Below the pieces are notes generated by a model that was given only the letters and a program-made list of their open reading frames with translations, did not search any database and had not been told where the DNA came from. From Dicyema japonicum (Eukaryota; Animalia; Dicyemida), in contig RDEW01000001.1 in NCBI GenBank assembly GCA_011109175.1, positions 1,502,360 through 1,566,359 on the forward strand: a stretch of 64,000 bases of DNA, written 5' to 3'. The position numbers were made by a program, and so were the translations under genes. This document shows positions 4,223 to 64,000 of the stretch, piece by piece (within the stretch, counting starts at the first letter, position 1; each line of letters starts with the position of its first letter).

Positions 4223-6734
4223 TCAGGCAAACATCTGTGATATCCGACGAAGAACAAACTCAATTCCCATATTGATAGTTTTGGAGACTCCATAAAACTG
4301 CAAGAATCCGTGAGGGAATCCGTCAAGCACTTCGATTTCAACATCATGTCCAATTTTATACAACCTCTTGGCTAGATTTACTGAATCGTCCAACAAGGGA
4401 TCAAAACTTCCAACCTTCAAGTAAACCTAAACCTTACAAATATCCTAATGGGTGGAAAACTCAGCAAGGATGTTGTCACTTAAATTTACGGGGGAAACCA
4501 AAATATCATTACAAATGTCCCGATTCCACAGTTTCAACACCACATCCCCAATCCACTTCCCAAAGTCGTATTTTTCGAATACATCCCCCACAGTTTTCGA
4601 GTCAAAGCCGGAAAATTGTGGAATTGTCCCATTGGACTCGGAAATGTCAATATTCAGATAGCCTATGACTAAAACACCAGGAGAACTAGAAATAATGGAG
4701 GCAAACGAAGAAAACGACACGATTGGGTCGATAATCGAGATAAACACAGAGGGAGTCAACTTTAATGACAAAGAACATGACGGATAGGCCAGAACGATCC
4801 CATCTGGTCTCCTAATACCACCAAAGAGTGCTTTTACTGTCACAACTTGAGCCAAATTGCCCCCCGCACTGTCTCCCATCAAAACAACTCGTCTCCCTTT
4901 AGTCCCTGCCTTTAAGTCAGCACAATAAACCGAGATAAGTAAGGTTCTTCAAAGCCCATGCGTAACAATAGAAGCACTCATTGACGGCACGTGGGAAGGG
5001 GCTTGCCGGAGATAGTGAGTAATCAACTGAAAGGATGGGGAGCATAGTAGCTCTGCTCAACTCTGTTAGGTAGGTCTAGGTCCCCCATTCAATATACAAT
5101 ATGACTGGCCGACGTCTGGGAGATGAATCCCCCTCCATGAAAGTGAATTATGAGATCCTCCGCGAGGTTTTCATTTTTATTAGACAAGAACTATCAGAAT
5201 AATCCACCAAATAAAAAAGCCACAAAGAATGCTAAGCCAAAATGAAAAAAATCACTATTTTAAGCATAAAATCGCCACATTGTACTTAGCGAGCTATCAT
5301 ACACAAATACACGCGTTATGGGGAATGCTAATAATCGAAAGGCAAGATTATATGAAATATTATGATAATCCAATACAAATCCACATCACAAGGAAATCAA
5401 TAGTTAAACTAACATTCGAACAATAGCCTTTAATGGCGACTGTGATGATTTACGGAACATGAATACAAGAAATTTTCATAGACCATACAAACACTGTATA
5501 AGCCTCAAGGGAACCCACGTGGAATAATCAACCATAGGATAGCAGTAGTTGCACAGATATATAAAAACTATATTCTTAGCACCATCTGATTTCACGGCAC
5601 AAAAGTGAATCAGAATATCTATGGATTATAAAAATGGGGGAAACACATATTTTGACAGTAAATTATAAACCAACCACCACTAGAATGGCAATAATAGGAA
5701 ACAGGGGAATCACAGTAAAGGGTGTATTTTGGGGACATATGAAAAGTTATGAGCGTTTGGAGAGAGGATGTAAATTACTACGTTGTACTGTTTATATGAG
5801 ACCAGTCTGACGGAGACTGGTGGTCCTTCTGGTGGGAATAATTGGAATCCGTCGGAAGTCTTTGAGGATTCAAAATTGAGTGTCGTCTTTGGGAGACGGA
5901 AATGATGGTTGAAGGAAAGTCGGTTGAAGTTAACATTGATAAACTATTTCGCGGTAAAAACAGAAAATACATTCAAAACGGGGTTTTCCGTTATATTCCA
6001 TAATTTTGCGGTGGCCGAGGGATCCACGAAATTCGAGCAGAACGATAACTACAACATAAACGGAAACCAAACGTATTTAGCACGGATTTTGTAGTCGTTT
6101 AAGTTCATCCTTAAAATCTCTGTTGCTGCATGGAACAGATTGCCGGGCTTACTGGCTCTCTTCAGTCTGTAGGCCGTCGAAACGGAGGCCACGTGGTTAA
6201 ACATATTTTGGATGGAATTTGGAAGCTTTCGATTAGGAAAAGGCAAGTTACATAAAACCCCAATTTGGACTGATAAAAGGGGATTTGGTTGATGGAAATC
6301 ATTTTATCCACAATTTCCTTGAAATCTTCAATTGTTGGAGAGTCCTTTTCTTGGTGGGAGATAATATGCTCGAGGACGTCGGAGATTTTCAACATTTCTT
6401 CGAAGATGTCGACATGTTGAACAAAATTTGAGATTTTAACCCCTTTTCTGCCATTTTTGTAGAATCCTGCCGTAATTTCGAAAATCGGCTCAACAGCCCT
6501 TTCCAAGACGGTGAAATAACTCCTCACTCCGTTATAAGGGATTTCCTCGTGACAGTCGTACGATTCTGTCTTAGATAATAATTTGTTTAGTCGTTTCTCA
6601 GTCTCCACGTGGTTGAGGATACTTTGAAGACGCGTAAATAGTTTTTCAGTAATAATTTTTGCAAAATTTAACTTTAAGTCCTCATTCAATAATTTTCTTG
6701 TAAATAATATTAAATTTATTGCTGAACAAGTCAT
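4223..6734 (-). CDS. LIPE: Hormone-sensitive lipase, multi-exon
   Basis: It has the HSL N-terminal region (YDCHEEIPYNG, SKLGFY), the HGGG oxyanion motif, the GDSAGGN nucleophile, a DPLLDD Asp motif and HGF His. Introns read are 22, 25 and 26 nt. I saw no disablements in the segments I read. Confidence 0.9.
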
Positions 6735-60539: not shown

Positions 60540-61362
60540 GGCTTCTCCAGTTGAGTTCTGTGGCGATCGCGAGAGACAACTAAGTTGAGTTAGTTAGTTA
60601 AAAGCTCCTTCGCGTATCCCTAAAAGGCTTTCGCTTGAGCCATCCTTTACAGCCATCCTCACCCACGCCACTTGTTTCTGGCCCTCATTCGAACATCATC
60701 CAGGTCGTCTTCTGTCACAAATTTACGACCGATTGTTTCGTAATCATCTTTTAAGAAAATTGGAAATGTATTTCTTGTCTGCCTCGAAATCCGTGACTTC
60801 CGGCGCAGTAAAAATATTCTTCCATTATTCTGTTACACGGCGTAGTCGGGTCCAGTCTAAGAATGTGTCAAAATAGTTGCCACCTCGATAGAATGTCTCC
60901 ATGTGTGCCTGAACACGAAAAAGGGAGATGAGGGCTAGAGATGTCTCATTTATATACGAACTAACTTCCGTGCTAATTGGTAAAGATTCACATAAAGCAT
61001 ATAGTTTCTCGTTTGAGATTTTTCTCGGCCAGAAGATTCCAGTATGCGCAGTTGGCTTCTGTGGAAAGTTTCTAGCCTCTCTAAATCGTTTTTAGAGGTT
61101 GCCCATGTTCCGGAATTGTATATTAGTATTGGCTTGATAAACGTGTCGTATAGTCTGACACGAAGTTTCAGTGAAGCATGCCTCTTCTTATCCAGATGTT
61201 GTACATTTTTTGAAGTATATGGTTGCCAGCATTTTCCTTTGACAAATATCCTTGGCGTCACCTAGTAGTGAGCCGAGTTTTTTGATGTCTCCAGAGTTCG
61301 TCAATTCTTGATTTGCTCGTTCGATTCTAGAGACTACTCGAGTGACAACTCAAAGTCTATTA
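60540..61362 (-). mobile_element. RTE-like LINE, 3' part (left flank of the Ginger insertion)
   Basis: KKLGSLLG, RLYDTFIKPILIYNSGTW, RRQLFGHILRL. Confidence 0.75.
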
Positions 61363-61414
61363 TGTCACATGGGCCAAGCGTTACCTATGGGCAGCCTGTT
61401 ACATTAACCTTGAA

Positions 61415-62330
61415 CCAAGATTATTATTATTATTTAAGCCAAAGAAACACCGTCTTAACCAATAACTAATATTCAGGTGATCCGGCATCTCTCAATAATC
61501 GGGCCATTTTTCTCGATGCTCCGACTGTGATCCCACGCATTTTCTATACGGACGGGGTCTTTTTCCTTTTCTCTTCTGAAATTGCCTCCAGTTGCCTCTA
61601 TGATAGACTCGAGTGCTCTGGGGGCAATTTCTTTATCTGTATATTTTTCTAGTAACTTTTTTGCTCTTGACTGGATATCTTGAATTTTTGTTAGGTTCGT
61701 TGCCGACAGGTTAGATCCCCATGCAGCACATGCATAGCCTATTGTTGGCTCGACATACTGCTTGTAGAGGTCCCGATACCTGGCAGATAAATTCCTCCAC
61801 AGTTCCAAAGGAAGGCCTTTACAAAATTGATCTTCTTTGCACAGGTTGATATGATAGATTCCACATGGGCTGAGAAGCAGAGGAAAGTATCAAAAGTTAC
61901 TCCCAGTATCTTCTGCGATTTCTTTTGTGGTATAGGTACTCCATTTAACGTGACATCAATTGTTTGCGTTCCCATCTTTCTATTCTTAGTAAATAGAGTG
62001 ACTGCTGACTTTTCGGAACATGCATTTAATCGATTCTCGCACAACCATCCATATATGTTATTTAGTATTCCTTGTAGTCTTTCTTTAGCATGTTCGACAT
62101 TTACGTCTCTAGATGCGACAACTATGTCATCGGCATAGGAAAGTAGTATGTCATTATTATTCATAGGTACGGGGAGATCACTCAAAAAACAAATTAAAAA
62201 GGATTGGTGACAGAGGAGATCCTTGGGGTACACCATTGGGTAATAATCCCGATCTGGAACTCTTGTTTCCGACGGATACTTTCCCTCGGCGTCCACTTAC
62301 GAAATTTGCTAACCATAACTTTAATGGTGC
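61415..62330 (-). mobile_element. 5'-truncated I/Jockey-like LINE nested in the Ginger element
   Basis: SYADDI, KILGVTFD, YKQYVEPTIGYACAAW, and a (TAA)n tail at ~61420-61436. Confidence 0.85.
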
Positions 62331-62479
62331 ATCAATTTTTGTCAAAATATTTTTCGTATGACTTTAATGGTGCATCAATTTTTGTCAAAAATATTAACTT
62401 CAATTAATTTTATAAATGATTTATTAACCACAAAAAATTAAATTTAAGTAACTTTTTTTAGTCTACTCATTAATACAGT

Positions 62480-63230
62480 CGATATTTCTCCTTTCGAATT
62501 TTTTATCTATCAAATTAAACTATTTAAAACTACCGCCACGCGATTATTCGATAAAATATTAATTATTTTCTGCAACTGGATAATACTTATTTATTGATTT
62601 TTAAATTCAGATCCATTGTCCGACTGAAGAAATTTACATGGCCCATTCAGGCGGAACAAAGATCTTAAGTTTTCACATACTTCTTTACCAGACTTATTAT
62701 AGAGTGGTCGTACAAAAGCGAATCTATAAATTAAAAAAAAAAAACCAGCCTACTATATATGTCAATGACCGTTAAAAATCCATTTGAAATTTTCTTTTAA
62801 TGTTGAAAAATTTTTTCAGGTCTATTAGATCTACCTGAAAACGTTCATTTGGAAAAGAAGCAAACACATGGTGATTTATATCTCCAATTATAAAAAATCA
62901 CGAACTTTTAAAAGACGCGAAAATTTACAGACTTCACAATTTCGAATGACTTTTCTGATAATCTCATTCTCTACAGTGAAGTATCTTTGTCGACATTCAT
63001 ACTCAATTTATTGACTCCTCCATGTGAAAACTCGTGCAACGATTTCGCAACATGCTCCATTTCGGTTTCATTATCCAGGGATATGACTAACTTGGGATCA
63101 GTTGATTTAAGATACAGTCTAAAATTATTGAAAATTTACAATACCTGTCATTGATAATATAAAATTCTCTATCTTCTTACAAGCCTATATTTTCGGTGCC
63201 TCGGGAAGATTTTCGGGAAATTTATCATGC
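62480..63230 (-). pseudogene. Retroviral-type integrase/transposase with micro-introns, frameshifted
   Basis: HEFSHGG...CEVC zinc finger, PNERFQVDLIDL, LTVIDIYSR|FAFVRPL and LQSDNGSEF. Introns are 63119-63144 (GT-AG, 26 nt) and 62724-62749 (GC-AG, 26 nt). Confidence 0.8.
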
Positions 63231-63322
63231 AAAGCATCTTTTAAAGTTTGATATTCAACTCAATCTTTCAACTCAAAAAAATGTAACAGGCTGCCCATGC
63301 GTTACGCGCCGCCCATGTGACA

Positions 63323-64000
63323 TATTATCAAGACCAGCCGCTTTCCTGTAGTTTAGTTTTCCTATTGCCTTGATAGTTTCCGCGATAATAATGGGGCAGT
63401 TAAGAGGAGCCGTTGATGTTATTGGAGATTTGTTTTCAATTTCTTAATTGTTAAAGATGTCATAGTAGTGTGAAGAGACTATGTTCGCTTTTCAATAACA
63501 TTCAATACTGATCGTCCATGTTGGTCGTGAATAACAATATTCCTGGTCGTTTCTTTTTGCTAATAATCGAATGGCTTTGAACATTTTGGATCCGTTCTTA
63601 TATTTCTTGATTTCATCGACCTGTTCCTCCACTTCCTTTTTTACTTGATATTTTTGAAGTTTTTTGATTTTTGTTAAAATTGAGTTACGAACTATCCTTA
63701 GCTCTTTTTTAGACTCGGTATATTTGAATTATTAATTCTAATCCTCAAATTCTTTTGTTCTGAAGATAAGTATGATATTTCTTCGTTGTTATATTTGAAT
63801 TTGTTTTTGTGAGTAGTCCCCAAAACCAACGACGCGGTATTCTTCATTGCACTCCAACGTCATTCCACAAATCCTGTGGCACTATTGTTTGTATTCATCT
63901 TGCTTAATTCCTTTCTGAGTTTTTCGCCATACTCTTTCATCTTTATTTCATTGCTTATTAGAGTTTCTGTATCCAATCTTTCGAATTCCGTTTTTCCATA
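63323..64000 (-). mobile_element. RTE-like LINE, EN-RT linker (right flank of the Ginger insertion)
   Basis: KMFKAIRLL...ETIKAIGKLNYRKAAGLDN ends exactly at the TIR. Confidence 0.7.

What the first reader, a model, noticed from the sequence alone, without database searches (positions are those of the whole stretch)
61363..63322. Ginger-like integrase DNA transposon whose transposase is split by host-style 24-27-nt micro-introns
Seen in sequence: 43-bp TGT...ACA TIRs, each with TGTCACA and TGTTACA at its ends, and a perfect TATTA TSD. The HHCC-DDE integrase needs removal of a 26-nt GT-AG intron (INDR|LYLK) and a 26-nt GC-AG intron (DIYSR|FAFV). Further candidates are ~62882-62905 (24 nt) and ~62507-62533 (27 nt). 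A LINE is nested inside, and the element is itself inserted in an RTE-like LINE. Established knowledge: Ginger elements use Gypsy-related integrases with TIRs and can contain introns. Inference: a DNA transposon whose introns shrank to the host minimum, implying long vertical co-evolution with the miniaturised spliceosome and possible splicing control of transposase expression.
Basis: partly seen in the sequence, partly recalled or inferred. Interest (0 to 1): 0.8.

Follow-up and report, generated by a model that had tools for sequence, protein, structure and literature searches.

The report
Ginger transposon with seven micro-introns
This is a broken copy of a small cut-and-paste transposon of the parasite Dicyema japonicum; in complete copies elsewhere in the genome its integrase gene is interrupted by seven tiny (23-29 base) host-type introns that its closest, microsporidian relatives lack.

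Summary
Window 61363-63322 is a TIR element with 43-nt TGT..ACA ends and a TATTA duplication, and it carries pieces of an HHCC-DDE integrase gene on the minus strand.

The family has at least 40 copies. Complete copies are about 1.93 kb, and 20 of 23 have a perfect 5-bp TSD that differs between loci (preference TAWTA).

One natural copy (L008) reads as an uninterrupted 440-aa integrase only after seven GT-AG segments of 26, 24, 23, 28, 29, 27 and 27 nt are removed. That protein aligns end to end with intronless homologues. Five junctions fall in ungapped conserved blocks.

The window copy is dead. It lacks the start codon, 634 nt of the core including the catalytic E, and the acceptor of intron 2, and it carries a 969-nt LINE insertion. 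The GC donor is polymorphic in the family.

The closest relatives are intronless microsporidian elements with the same TATTA duplication. Sister families in the same genome have micro-introns at other positions. This points to intron turnover, probably gain, not shrinkage.

No RNA data were reachable, so splicing is inferred. Other windows of this scan noted the same family.

The parts
61358..61362 (.). Target-site duplication, left copy (TATTA)
   Evidence: Same 5 nt at 63323-63327. 20 of 23 family copies have a perfect 5-bp TSD that differs between loci.
61363..61405 (+). Terminal inverted repeat at the 3' end of the integrase gene (TGTCACA...TGTTACA)
   Evidence: 38 of 43 positions match the other end. 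Pattern found twice against 0.00 expected. Present at the ends of the family copies.
61406..61423 (-). Subterminal transposon sequence up to the LINE insertion point. ATTA at 61420-61423 recurs at 62393-62396.
   Evidence: Read against complete copies.
61424..62392 (-). Nested 5'-truncated LINE fragment: RT domain, a (TAA)n-like 3' tail at 61424-61436, and a 29-nt duplication at its 5' junction (62319-62347 and 62362-62390)
   Evidence: RVT_1 hits on ORFs 61739-62296 and 62178-62345. A 971-nt block is absent from all other family copies.
62444..62506 (-). Exon 8 with stop codon (IKNSKGEISTVLMSRLKKVT*)
   Evidence: Collinear with the C-termini of homologues.
62507..62533 (-). Intron 7: 27 nt, GT-AG, phase 0, with in-frame stops
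   Evidence: Junction lies in an ungapped conserved block.
62534..62587 (-). Remnant of exon 7, ending at the breakpoint of a 634-nt internal deletion at 62587|62588. The deletion removes the end of exon 4, exons 5-6, introns 4-6 and the catalytic E.
   Evidence: L002-L004 have the identical deletion at other loci.
62588..62723 (-). Remnant of exon 4 (FAFVRPLYNK...LQSDNGSEFKNQ, second catalytic D)
   Evidence: rve hit E 0.006 on this piece. The full exon 4 of L008 passes the rve cut-off at 36.1 bits.
62724..62749 (-). Intron 3: 26 nt here, GC-AG, phase 2, with a T run of variable length
   Evidence: IDIYSR|FAFVR is continuous in Dictyocoela proteins.
62750..62888 (-). Exon 3 (IGDINHH...ERFQVDLIDL..., first catalytic D)
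62889..62905 (-). Remnant of intron 2 (24 nt GT-AG in most copies). Here 7 nt including the acceptor AG are deleted.
62906..63118 (-). Exon 2 (HHCC zinc-binding region), with a copy-specific frameshift
   Evidence: Exon 2 of L008 passes the Integrase_H2C2 cut-off at 31.1 bits.
63119..63144 (-). Intron 1: 26 nt, GT-AG, phase 2
   Evidence: Present at this site in all 23 copies, nearly identical in sequence and 25-26 nt long; GT-AG in 21, donor mutated to GC or GA in two. Junction lies in an ungapped conserved block.
63145..63270 (-). Remnant of exon 1. The start codon and about 287 nt of 5' non-coding sequence are deleted (321 nt in all, breakpoints 63270-63276).
63280..63322 (-). Terminal inverted repeat at the 5' end of the gene
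63323..63327 (.). Target-site duplication, right copy (TATTA)

Best explanation
The window holds a dead, non-autonomous copy of a young family ('family A') of compact Ginger2/Tdd-like cut-and-paste DNA transposons of Dicyema japonicum. Complete elements are about 1.93 kb. They have 43-nt TGT..ACA inverted ends and one gene for a 440-aa integrase-type transposase: an HHCC zinc-binding region, a DDE core and an SH3-like C-terminal module.

The transposase cuts at the TGT..ACA ends and inserts with a 5-bp staggered cut, preferring TAWTA. The gene carries seven spliceosomal introns of 23-29 nt, the host's normal intron size and density. The host spliceosome must remove all seven to make transposase, because each one carries a stop or shifts the frame if retained.

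The window copy belongs to a sub-lineage with a 634-nt internal deletion that was moved in trans. It later lost its 5' part and took up a LINE insertion.

Shown here: the element structure, the copies, the TSDs, an intact ORF only after removing the seven segments, and collinearity with intronless homologues.
Inferred: actual splicing, present-day activity, and that most of these introns arose within dicyemid-resident lineages instead of being inherited long and then shortened.
For: Host:
- 67.5 Mb in 377 scaffolds equals the published D. japonicum assembly (PMC6736024).

Family:
- At least 40 copies at 93-97% identity.
- Perfect 5-bp TSDs of differing sequence in 20 of 23 copies. TAATA or TATTA in 12 of 20, and T at position 4 in 20 of 20.
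- Exon divergence from L008 is 0-2.7%.
- L001-L004 share one 634-nt deletion, and L023, L025 and L026 share a 210-nt deletion, at different loci.

Introns:
- L008 gives 440 codons without a stop only after seven GT-AG segments of 26, 24, 23, 28, 29, 27 and 27 nt are removed.
- All seven are present in every copy that covers them.
- Indels are 6.8 times denser in them than in exons (p 8e-7).
- The spliced protein scores 470.9 bits over positions 2-429 of a profile built from intronless homologues.
- Junctions 1, 2, 3, 6 and 7 lie in ungapped conserved blocks.
- Exon 2 passes Integrase_H2C2 and exon 4 passes rve.

Host style:
- Dicyemid introns have a median of 27 bp (PMC6543705), and splice signals are reduced to GTa..AG (PMC13644364).
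- A host lipase gene in this window has 22- and 25-nt GT-AG introns between exons that are collinear on the Abhydrolase_3 profile.
- Seven introns in 1323 nt compares with 6.2 introns per 1155-nt CDS in host genes.

Relatives:
- A Dictyocoela muelleri element has 213-nt TIRs, TGTCG..CGACA ends, a TATTA TSD and a single uninterrupted 450-aa ORF.
- Tree: family A + Dictyocoela 96, + Dicyema family C 100.
- Family C lacks introns 1, 2, 3 and 7. It shares position 6 with an unrelated 26-nt sequence, and has its own introns at DLKR|FSEH and SQ|GIVERFN, kept in 8 and 6 of its 10 aligned copies and damaged at a splice site or by deletion in the rest.
Against: - No RNA evidence. The only four runs holding the sequence come from one sample and look like genomic DNA (mate-pair adaptors). 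None of the 15 joints listed is a 23-29-nt skip, and 42 further joints were not shown.
- Only one of 13 full-length copies examined is intact. The others carry 1-5 small exon indels; some may be assembly errors in homopolymers, but that is not shown.
- Junction 5 lies in a variable linker, so only ORF continuity and GT-AG support it.
- The excess of indels in introns may partly reflect their T and A runs.
- Substitution diversity differs little between codon positions, as expected for neutral decay after insertion, so it gives no proof of selection.
- Gain versus loss of introns is not settled. The protein databases favour intronless relatives, because their genes are called as single ORFs.
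Confidence: 0.85

Rival explanations
1. The introns are ancestral to this transposon lineage, were once longer, and shrank together with host introns during long vertical residence. Intronless relatives and sister families lost them, for example by recombination with reverse-transcribed spliced mRNA.
For: - Intron 6 sits at the same phase-0 position in families A and C, with unrelated sequence, so at least one intron predates their split.
- LINE reverse transcriptase is abundant in this genome.
- The databases are biased towards intronless relatives.
Against: - Introns 1, 2, 3 and 7 are absent from Dictyocoela, family C and all other relatives seen. Introns 1-3 are absent from family B.
- Family C has two introns of its own.
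- An all-ancestral model needs about ten ancestral introns and many independent partial losses.
- No long intron was seen at any of these positions in any relative.
Confidence: 0.25
2. The seven segments are not spliced. Family A is a set of decayed pseudogene copies moved by a transposase made elsewhere, and the clean ORF of L008 after removal is a by-product of how the segments were chosen.
For: - No RNA evidence.
- 12 of 13 full-length copies have frame-breaking indels even after the segments are removed.
- Other Ginger-like families exist in the genome.
Against: - The segments are the same in all copies. All seven are GT-AG in L008 and nearly all are in the other copies, and all are of host intron length.
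- Their removal gives gap-free collinearity with homologues in five conserved blocks and an end-to-end profile match.
- The other families are only about 40-46% identical in protein and have different ends where seen, so cross-mobilisation is unlikely.
Confidence: 0.05
3. It is not a DNA transposon but a fragment of an LTR retrotransposon pol gene, or a domesticated host integrase gene of the KRBA2, SCAND3 or GIN type.
For: - The nearest named proteins carry automatic names such as 'Gag-Pol polyprotein' and 'KRAB-A domain-containing protein 2-like'.
Against: - Inverted ends, not direct repeats, with a 5-bp TSD at every copy.
- The whole element is 1.93 kb with no RT, RNase H, protease or gag.
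- There are tens of near-identical copies and deletion derivatives at different loci.
Confidence: 0.02

Closest known systems
Ginger2/Tdd DNA transposons (Bao, Kapitonov & Jurka 2010, PMC2836005), including TDD-4/TDD-5 of Dictyostelium
   Same: - Cut-and-paste TIR elements with TGTNR termini (here TGTCA).
- A Gypsy-integrase-like transposase with H2C2 and DDE.
- A 5-bp TSD as in TDD-4/5, and an AT-rich near-palindromic target (RTATAY there, TAWTA here).
- The nearest named relatives are KRBA2-like and SCAND3-like proteins, which PMC3575427 derives from the Ginger2 clade.
   Different: - Much smaller (1.93 kb), with shorter TIRs (43 nt against about 50-180).
- Metazoan Ginger2 elements make 4-bp TSDs.
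- The C-terminal module looks like a degenerate GPY/F module (GPF in family B), which Ginger2 is said to lack.
- Seven micro-introns.
- No Repbase Ginger2 sequence could be put in the tree. Grouping with SCAND3-like and KRBA2-like proteins has only 79 and 62 UFBoot.
Compact integrase-only elements of microsporidia (Dictyocoela muelleri, D. roeselum, Nosema granulosis, Pseudoloma), annotated as 'Gag-Pol polyprotein'
   Same: - 57-59% identity over the integrase core (exon 4), the same 420-460-aa architecture and the same TGTC terminus.
- The same TATTA 5-bp TSD, a size of about 1.8 kb, and one gene.
- Sister to family A in the tree (UFBoot 96).
   Different: - Uninterrupted ORF with no introns.
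- 213-nt TIRs.
- AT-rich host genome (24% GC).
Ginger1 transposons and their intron-bearing transposase genes (1-4 introns, one of them GC-AG)
   Same: - An integrase-type transposase with TIRs and TGTNR ends.
- Introns in the transposase gene, including a GC-AG case.
   Different: - Ginger1 makes 4-bp CCGG or CCGT TSDs, is 2.6-7 kb, and carries OTU or Ulp1 and PHD C-terminal domains.
- None of these is present here.
Intron turnover in transposase genes of other superfamilies (CACTA, PMC4158355)
   Same: Exon-intron structure of a DDE transposase differs between related families.
   Different: In CACTA elements intron loss dominates and the introns are of ordinary plant size. Here the introns are 23-29 nt, and family-specific positions next to intronless close relatives point to gain.

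Membership tests
Ginger2/Tdd | Terminal inverted repeats with TGTNR termini | tested here: met
   43-nt TIRs beginning TGTCA in the window and in 23 copies. Definition from PMC2836005.
Ginger2/Tdd | Short TSD (4 bp in metazoan Ginger2, 5 bp in TDD-4/5) at AT-rich near-palindromic targets | tested here: met
   5-bp TSD perfect in 20 of 23 copies, TAATA or TATTA in 12 of 20. The length matches TDD-4/5, not the metazoan members.
Ginger2/Tdd | Transposase with an H2C2 zinc finger and a DDE integrase core, and no RT, RNase H or gag in the element | tested here: met
   Integrase_H2C2 31.1 bits and rve 36.1 bits, both above cut-off. No other Pfam family in the 1.93-kb element.
Ginger2/Tdd | [quoted passage not shown] | tested here: inconclusive
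   No Pfam model covers these motifs. By eye the C-terminal module (GDKV...KFESQYYPVAEI) resembles a degenerate GPY/F module, and family B has EGPFTV. YPYY was not examined.
Ginger2/Tdd | Phylogenetic placement with Ginger2 transposases, not Ginger1 or LTR integrases | tested here: inconclusive
   The compact clade (UFBoot 97) groups with SCAND3-like (79) and KRBA2-like (62) proteins, and long Pol proteins fall outside. No Repbase Ginger1, Ginger2 or TDD sequence was available.
Ginger1 | 4-bp CCGG or CCGT TSD | tested here: not met
   The TSD is 5 bp and AT-rich.
Ginger1 | C-terminal OTU or Ulp1 protease (with or without PHD) on the transposase | tested here: not met
   No such Pfam hit on any exon. 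The protein ends after 440 aa.
GingerRoot | 6-bp GC-rich TSD, TA..TA termini, 100-150-bp TIRs, 3.9-12.9 kb | tested here: not met
   5-bp AT-rich TSD, TGT..ACA ends, 43-nt TIRs and 1.93 kb. Definition from PMC6839031.
Gypsy-type LTR retrotransposon | Direct long terminal repeats and a pol gene with RT and RNase H | tested here: not met
   The ends are inverted, and the only RT in the window copy belongs to a LINE insertion absent from all other copies.
Host-type spliceosomal micro-intron (Dicyema) | GT-AG (rarely GC-AG) borders and a length in the host range (median 27 bp) | tested here: met
   Seven GT-AG segments of 23-29 nt. Host values. Host lipase gene in the window has introns of 22 and 25 nt.
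Host-type spliceosomal micro-intron (Dicyema) | Removal restores an open frame collinear with homologues, and retention breaks it | tested here: met
   Each segment carries an in-frame stop (introns 2, 6, 7) or has a length that is not a multiple of 3 (introns 1, 3, 4, 5).
Host-type spliceosomal micro-intron (Dicyema) | Absent from mature RNA | not testable with these tools
   No RNA run was offered. The four runs laid look like genomic DNA, and the caps are used.

The most novel reading that the evidence does not exclude
Ginger-type transposase genes living in the Dicyema genome have repeatedly acquired new introns that were host-minimal in size (23-29 nt) from the start. They have reached the intron density of host genes, while their closest relatives in microsporidia stayed intronless. 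A young, possibly still mobile transposon family would then be a natural reporter of de novo intron gain and of the sequence requirements of the smallest animal introns. The A-Dictyocoela sister relation would also mark a horizontal transfer between a dicyemid-type host and microsporidia.
Probability: 0.45. Interest if true: 0.8.

Novelty: new variant of a known kind. Interest (0 to 1): 0.62.

Why it matters
Introns shorter than 30 nt were only recently accepted as an animal feature, and what such introns need in order to be recognised is an open question.

Here a selfish gene cannot make its protein unless seven of them are removed. It sits in the genome in tens of near-identical copies, with natural variants at donors (GT or GC), in T-run length and in acceptors. 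That is a ready-made mutational series for minimal-intron splicing.

The contrast between intronless microsporidian relatives and differently interrupted sister families in the same genome makes the origin of the introns (gain or loss) directly testable with more dicyemid genomes.

It is also a practical warning for annotation. In such genomes ORF-based transposon detection will call active elements dead.

Tried and rejected
- RNA evidence. The look-up of sequencing runs offered no RNA run. The four runs listed come from one sample and one study and were laid on L008:1128-3107. They behave as genomic DNA (Nextera mate-pair adaptor ends, even cover). The 15 joints listed skip 44-977 nt and fit internally deleted copies, and none is a 23-29-nt skip; 42 further joints were not shown. 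This says nothing about splicing.
- Word-index protein search with exon 4 alone gave one hit because of its length window. The exhaustive search was needed. No protein of this genome itself appeared in either search, so annotated or transcript-derived products could not be used.
- Empty-site proof of the window insertion. The flanks were searched in the genome and in all fetched loci. The left-flank repeat always ends at 61327 and no paralogue spans the site.
- Pfam on the flanking ORFs found nothing. A weak BLASTP match (E 5e-4) links the left-flank ORF to the post-RT region of the nested LINE.
- Codon-position diversity as a test of selection: c1 0.0082, c2 0.0049, c3 0.0080, introns 0.0113. 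This is too little contrast to use.
- L046, first taken for an intron-3-less family, is a family-A copy in which intron 3 happens to read through.
- No TIRs were found around the single family-B copy L036.
All protein work used the natural copy L008 or database proteins.
Full report
**What is in the window.**
- The stretch 61363-63322 is bounded by two 43-nt inverted ends that match at 38 of 43 positions. Each runs from TGTCACA to TGTTACA. Both are flanked by TATTA.
- The 41-nt core pattern occurs exactly twice in the window, against 0.00 expected.
- On the minus strand lie pieces of an integrase gene: an HHCC region (weak Integrase_H2C2 and zf-H2C2 hits), ERFQVDLIDL, and LQSDNGSEF (rve, E 0.006).
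- Between 61424 and 62392 lies a reverse-transcriptase fragment (RVT_1).

**The host.** The window is G000:C1:1502360-1566359 of a 67,542,437-base assembly in 377 contigs. That equals the published Dicyema japonicum assembly of 67.5 Mb in 377 scaffolds (PMC6736024).
- Dicyemid introns have a median of 27 bp, and two thirds are under 30 bp (PMC6543705).
- Their splice signals are reduced to GTa...AG (PMC13644364).
- As a control inside this window I examined a hormone-sensitive-lipase-like gene (HSL_N and Abhydrolase_3). Its exons are collinear on the Abhydrolase_3 profile (positions 1-17, 20-62, 65-112).
- Those exons are separated by a 22-nt and a 25-nt GT-AG segment.

**The family.** A DNA search of the genome with 62440-63322 found at least 40 copies at 93-97% identity, from 253 first-look candidates.
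- Twenty-three loci carry both ends.
- After orientation, 20 of 23 show a perfect 5-bp duplication whose sequence differs from locus to locus. TAATA or TATTA accounts for 12 of 20, T stands at position 4 in 20 of 20, and A at position 2 in 17 of 20. These are true target-site duplications with a TAWTA preference.
- Complete copies are 1.93-1.94 kb.
- L001-L004 share one identical 634-nt internal deletion at different loci. L023, L025 and L026 share a 210-nt deletion. Deletion derivatives have therefore been moved in trans.
- Exon divergence from the copy L008 is 0-2.7%, so the family is young.

**The window copy is a wreck**. Compared with L008:
- It lacks 321 nt, namely the 5' non-coding part and the first 14 codons with the ATG.
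- It lacks 7 nt of intron 2.
- It lacks 634 nt running from the end of exon 4 to exon 7, which include the catalytic E.
- It has several single-base indels.
- It holds a LINE fragment (61424-62392) flanked by ATTA on both sides.

**The introns.** On complete copies I placed seven GT-AG segments where the reading frame breaks.
- In L008 (element L008:1128-3107) they measure 26, 24, 23, 28, 29, 27 and 27 nt. Removing all seven gives 440 codons without a stop, from ATG to TAA.
- Each one, if retained, gives an in-frame stop (introns 2, 6, 7) or a frameshift (introns 1, 3, 4, 5).
- All seven are present in every copy that covers the site.
- Their lengths vary between copies (T runs, small indels) without regard to frame. 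Indel events are 6.8 times denser than in exons (15 events in 184 nt against 16 in 1323 nt over 13 copies, p 8e-7). Their homopolymer runs may contribute to this excess.
- The donor of intron 3 is GT in 14 copies and GC in 9.
That AG only looks like an acceptor because the true one was deleted in this copy.

**Homology test of the gene model.** Exon 2 passes Pfam's cut-off for Integrase_H2C2 and exon 4 passes it for rve.
- An exhaustive search with exon 4 found 17,546 relatives at E up to 0.001. The best are stand-alone proteins of 400-460 aa in which the match begins at residue 169-176, as in the spliced model.
- The closest named relatives are from microsporidia: Dictyocoela roeselum (458 aa, 59%), D. 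muelleri, Nosema granulosis and Pseudoloma.
- The spliced L008 protein matches a profile of eight such intronless proteins over positions 2-429, at 470.9 bits.
- In a multiple alignment, junctions 1, 2, 3, 6 and 7 fall inside ungapped conserved blocks. Examples are IDIYSR|FAFVR against IDIYSRFGIVR, and GDK|VRAKKDFGTNPS against GKKVRVYKDFGTNPS.
- Junction 4 sits at the edge of a conserved block, and junction 5 sits in a variable linker.
- The segments are therefore extra sequence relative to the homologues, not intronised coding sequence.

**What kind of element.** A full Dictyocoela muelleri element has 213-nt TIRs (98% complementary), TGTCG...CGACA ends and TATTA on both sides. It carries one uninterrupted 450-aa ORF in about 1.8 kb.
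- The family definitions come from the literature:
  - Ginger1 makes 4-bp CCGG TSDs and carries OTU or Ulp1 domains.
  - Ginger2/Tdd has TGTNR ends, AT-rich targets, and 4-bp TSDs (5 bp in TDD-4/5).
  - GingerRoot makes 6-bp TSDs and has TA..TA ends.
- The present family fits Ginger2/Tdd best.
- More distant named relatives are 'KRAB-A domain-containing protein 2-like' and 'SCAN domain-containing protein 3-like'. PMC3575427 derives those genes from the Ginger2 clade.
- In an IQ-TREE analysis of the HHCC-DDE region (54 sequences), the compact clade has UFBoot 97. It groups with SCAND3-like (79) and KRBA2-like (62) proteins, and long Pol polyproteins fall outside.
- No Repbase reference sequence was available, and the C-terminal module looks like a degenerate GPY/F module. 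The subgroup assignment is therefore tentative.

**Origin of the introns.** A protein search of the genome gave 1,494 first-look candidates and several distinct families.
- Family B (L036) is open over residues 3-298. It lacks introns 1-3, and GDSVLVPKDF is continuous, so it also lacks intron 6. It has 24-26-nt GT-AG segments only in its C-terminal part.
- Family C (L042 and at least 11 further long copies) lacks introns 1, 2, 3 and 7. It shares the phase-0 position of intron 6, but with an unrelated 26-nt sequence.
- Family C also has its own introns at DLKR|FSEH (24-25 nt) and inside the most conserved motif, SQ|GIVERFN (25-28 nt). Both are kept in most of its copies (8 and 6 of the 10 aligned); the others have a mutated splice site or a deletion there.
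- In the tree, family A pairs with Dictyocoela (96), and family C is their sister (100).
- So intron positions are family-specific, while the closest relatives have none.
- This fits repeated gain of introns already of minimal size. Alternatively it fits a very intron-rich ancestor with many partial losses.
- It does not fit simple shrinkage of a fixed ancestral set.
- Seven introns in 1323 nt equals the host's density of 6.2 per 1155-nt CDS.

**What is missing.** No RNA run was offered. The four runs that hold the element come from one sample, look genomic, and none of the 15 joints listed is a micro-intron skip, with 42 further joints not shown. Splicing, current activity and any regulatory role are therefore inferences.
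- Only one of 13 full-length copies is intact. Several others differ from it by single-base indels alone: L011 has no substitutions and two 1-nt deletions. These may be assembly errors.

**Flanks.** The left-flank repeat has at least 40 copies but ends at 61327, 35 nt from the insertion.
- The right flank reads ...AIGKLNYRKAAGLDN on the minus strand, which I recognise as LINE RT-like. Pfam reports nothing there.
- Insertion into a LINE is plausible but not shown.

**Earlier notes of this scan.** First-stage readers of other windows noted the same family: s1-315932, s1-324114, s1-383486 (my L019) and s1-331928. I reached the seven-intron model before seeing them, and I tested it on the copies myself.

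Noticed in passing
L001:3439-3483 (G000:C1, about 380-420 nt beyond the window's end): A third family-A terminal repeat, in the same orientation as the right TIR, lies 1.1 kb downstream of the element and is again followed by TATTA. Its partner end was not identified. It may be a solo end or part of another copy.
   Followed up: no
window 4226-6734 (minus strand): A host hormone-sensitive-lipase-like gene (HSL_N and Abhydrolase_3, with HGGGF and GDSAGG motifs). Its exons are separated by 22-nt and 25-nt GT-AG introns. I used it as the in-window control for host intron style.
   Followed up: partly
L032:2294-4089 (Dictyocoela muelleri contig SDVU01000034.1): A microsporidian element of the same clade: 213-nt TIRs (98%), TGTCG..CGACA ends, a TATTA TSD and one intronless 450-aa ORF. 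A decayed copy sits on L031. It is sister to the Dicyema family in the tree, which raises the question of horizontal transfer. Contamination was not excluded.
   Followed up: partly
L042, L064-L074 (family C) and L036, L040, L054 (family B): Other Ginger-like families of the same genome with micro-introns at different positions. One of them splits the conserved SQ|GIVERFN motif. The protein search gave 1,494 first-look candidates genome-wide.
   Followed up: partly
L011, L009, L019 and other full-length copies: Copies differ from the intact copy mainly by single-base indels, not substitutions (L011: 0 substitutions and two 1-nt deletions in 1321 nt). This may reflect homopolymer errors in the assembly, so more copies may be intact than appear so.
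   Followed up: no
window 62319-62347 and 62362-62390: A 29-nt direct duplication of LINE coding sequence at the 5' junction of the nested LINE. ATTA stands on both sides of the LINE (61420-61423 and 62393-62396) and may be its short target duplication.
   Followed up: no
window 60950-61327: A repeat with at least 40 copies at 83-91% identity whose homology ends sharply at 61327. It looks like the 3' part of a 5'-truncated LINE, distinct from the LINE-like sequence right of the element (63324-64000).
   Followed up: partly
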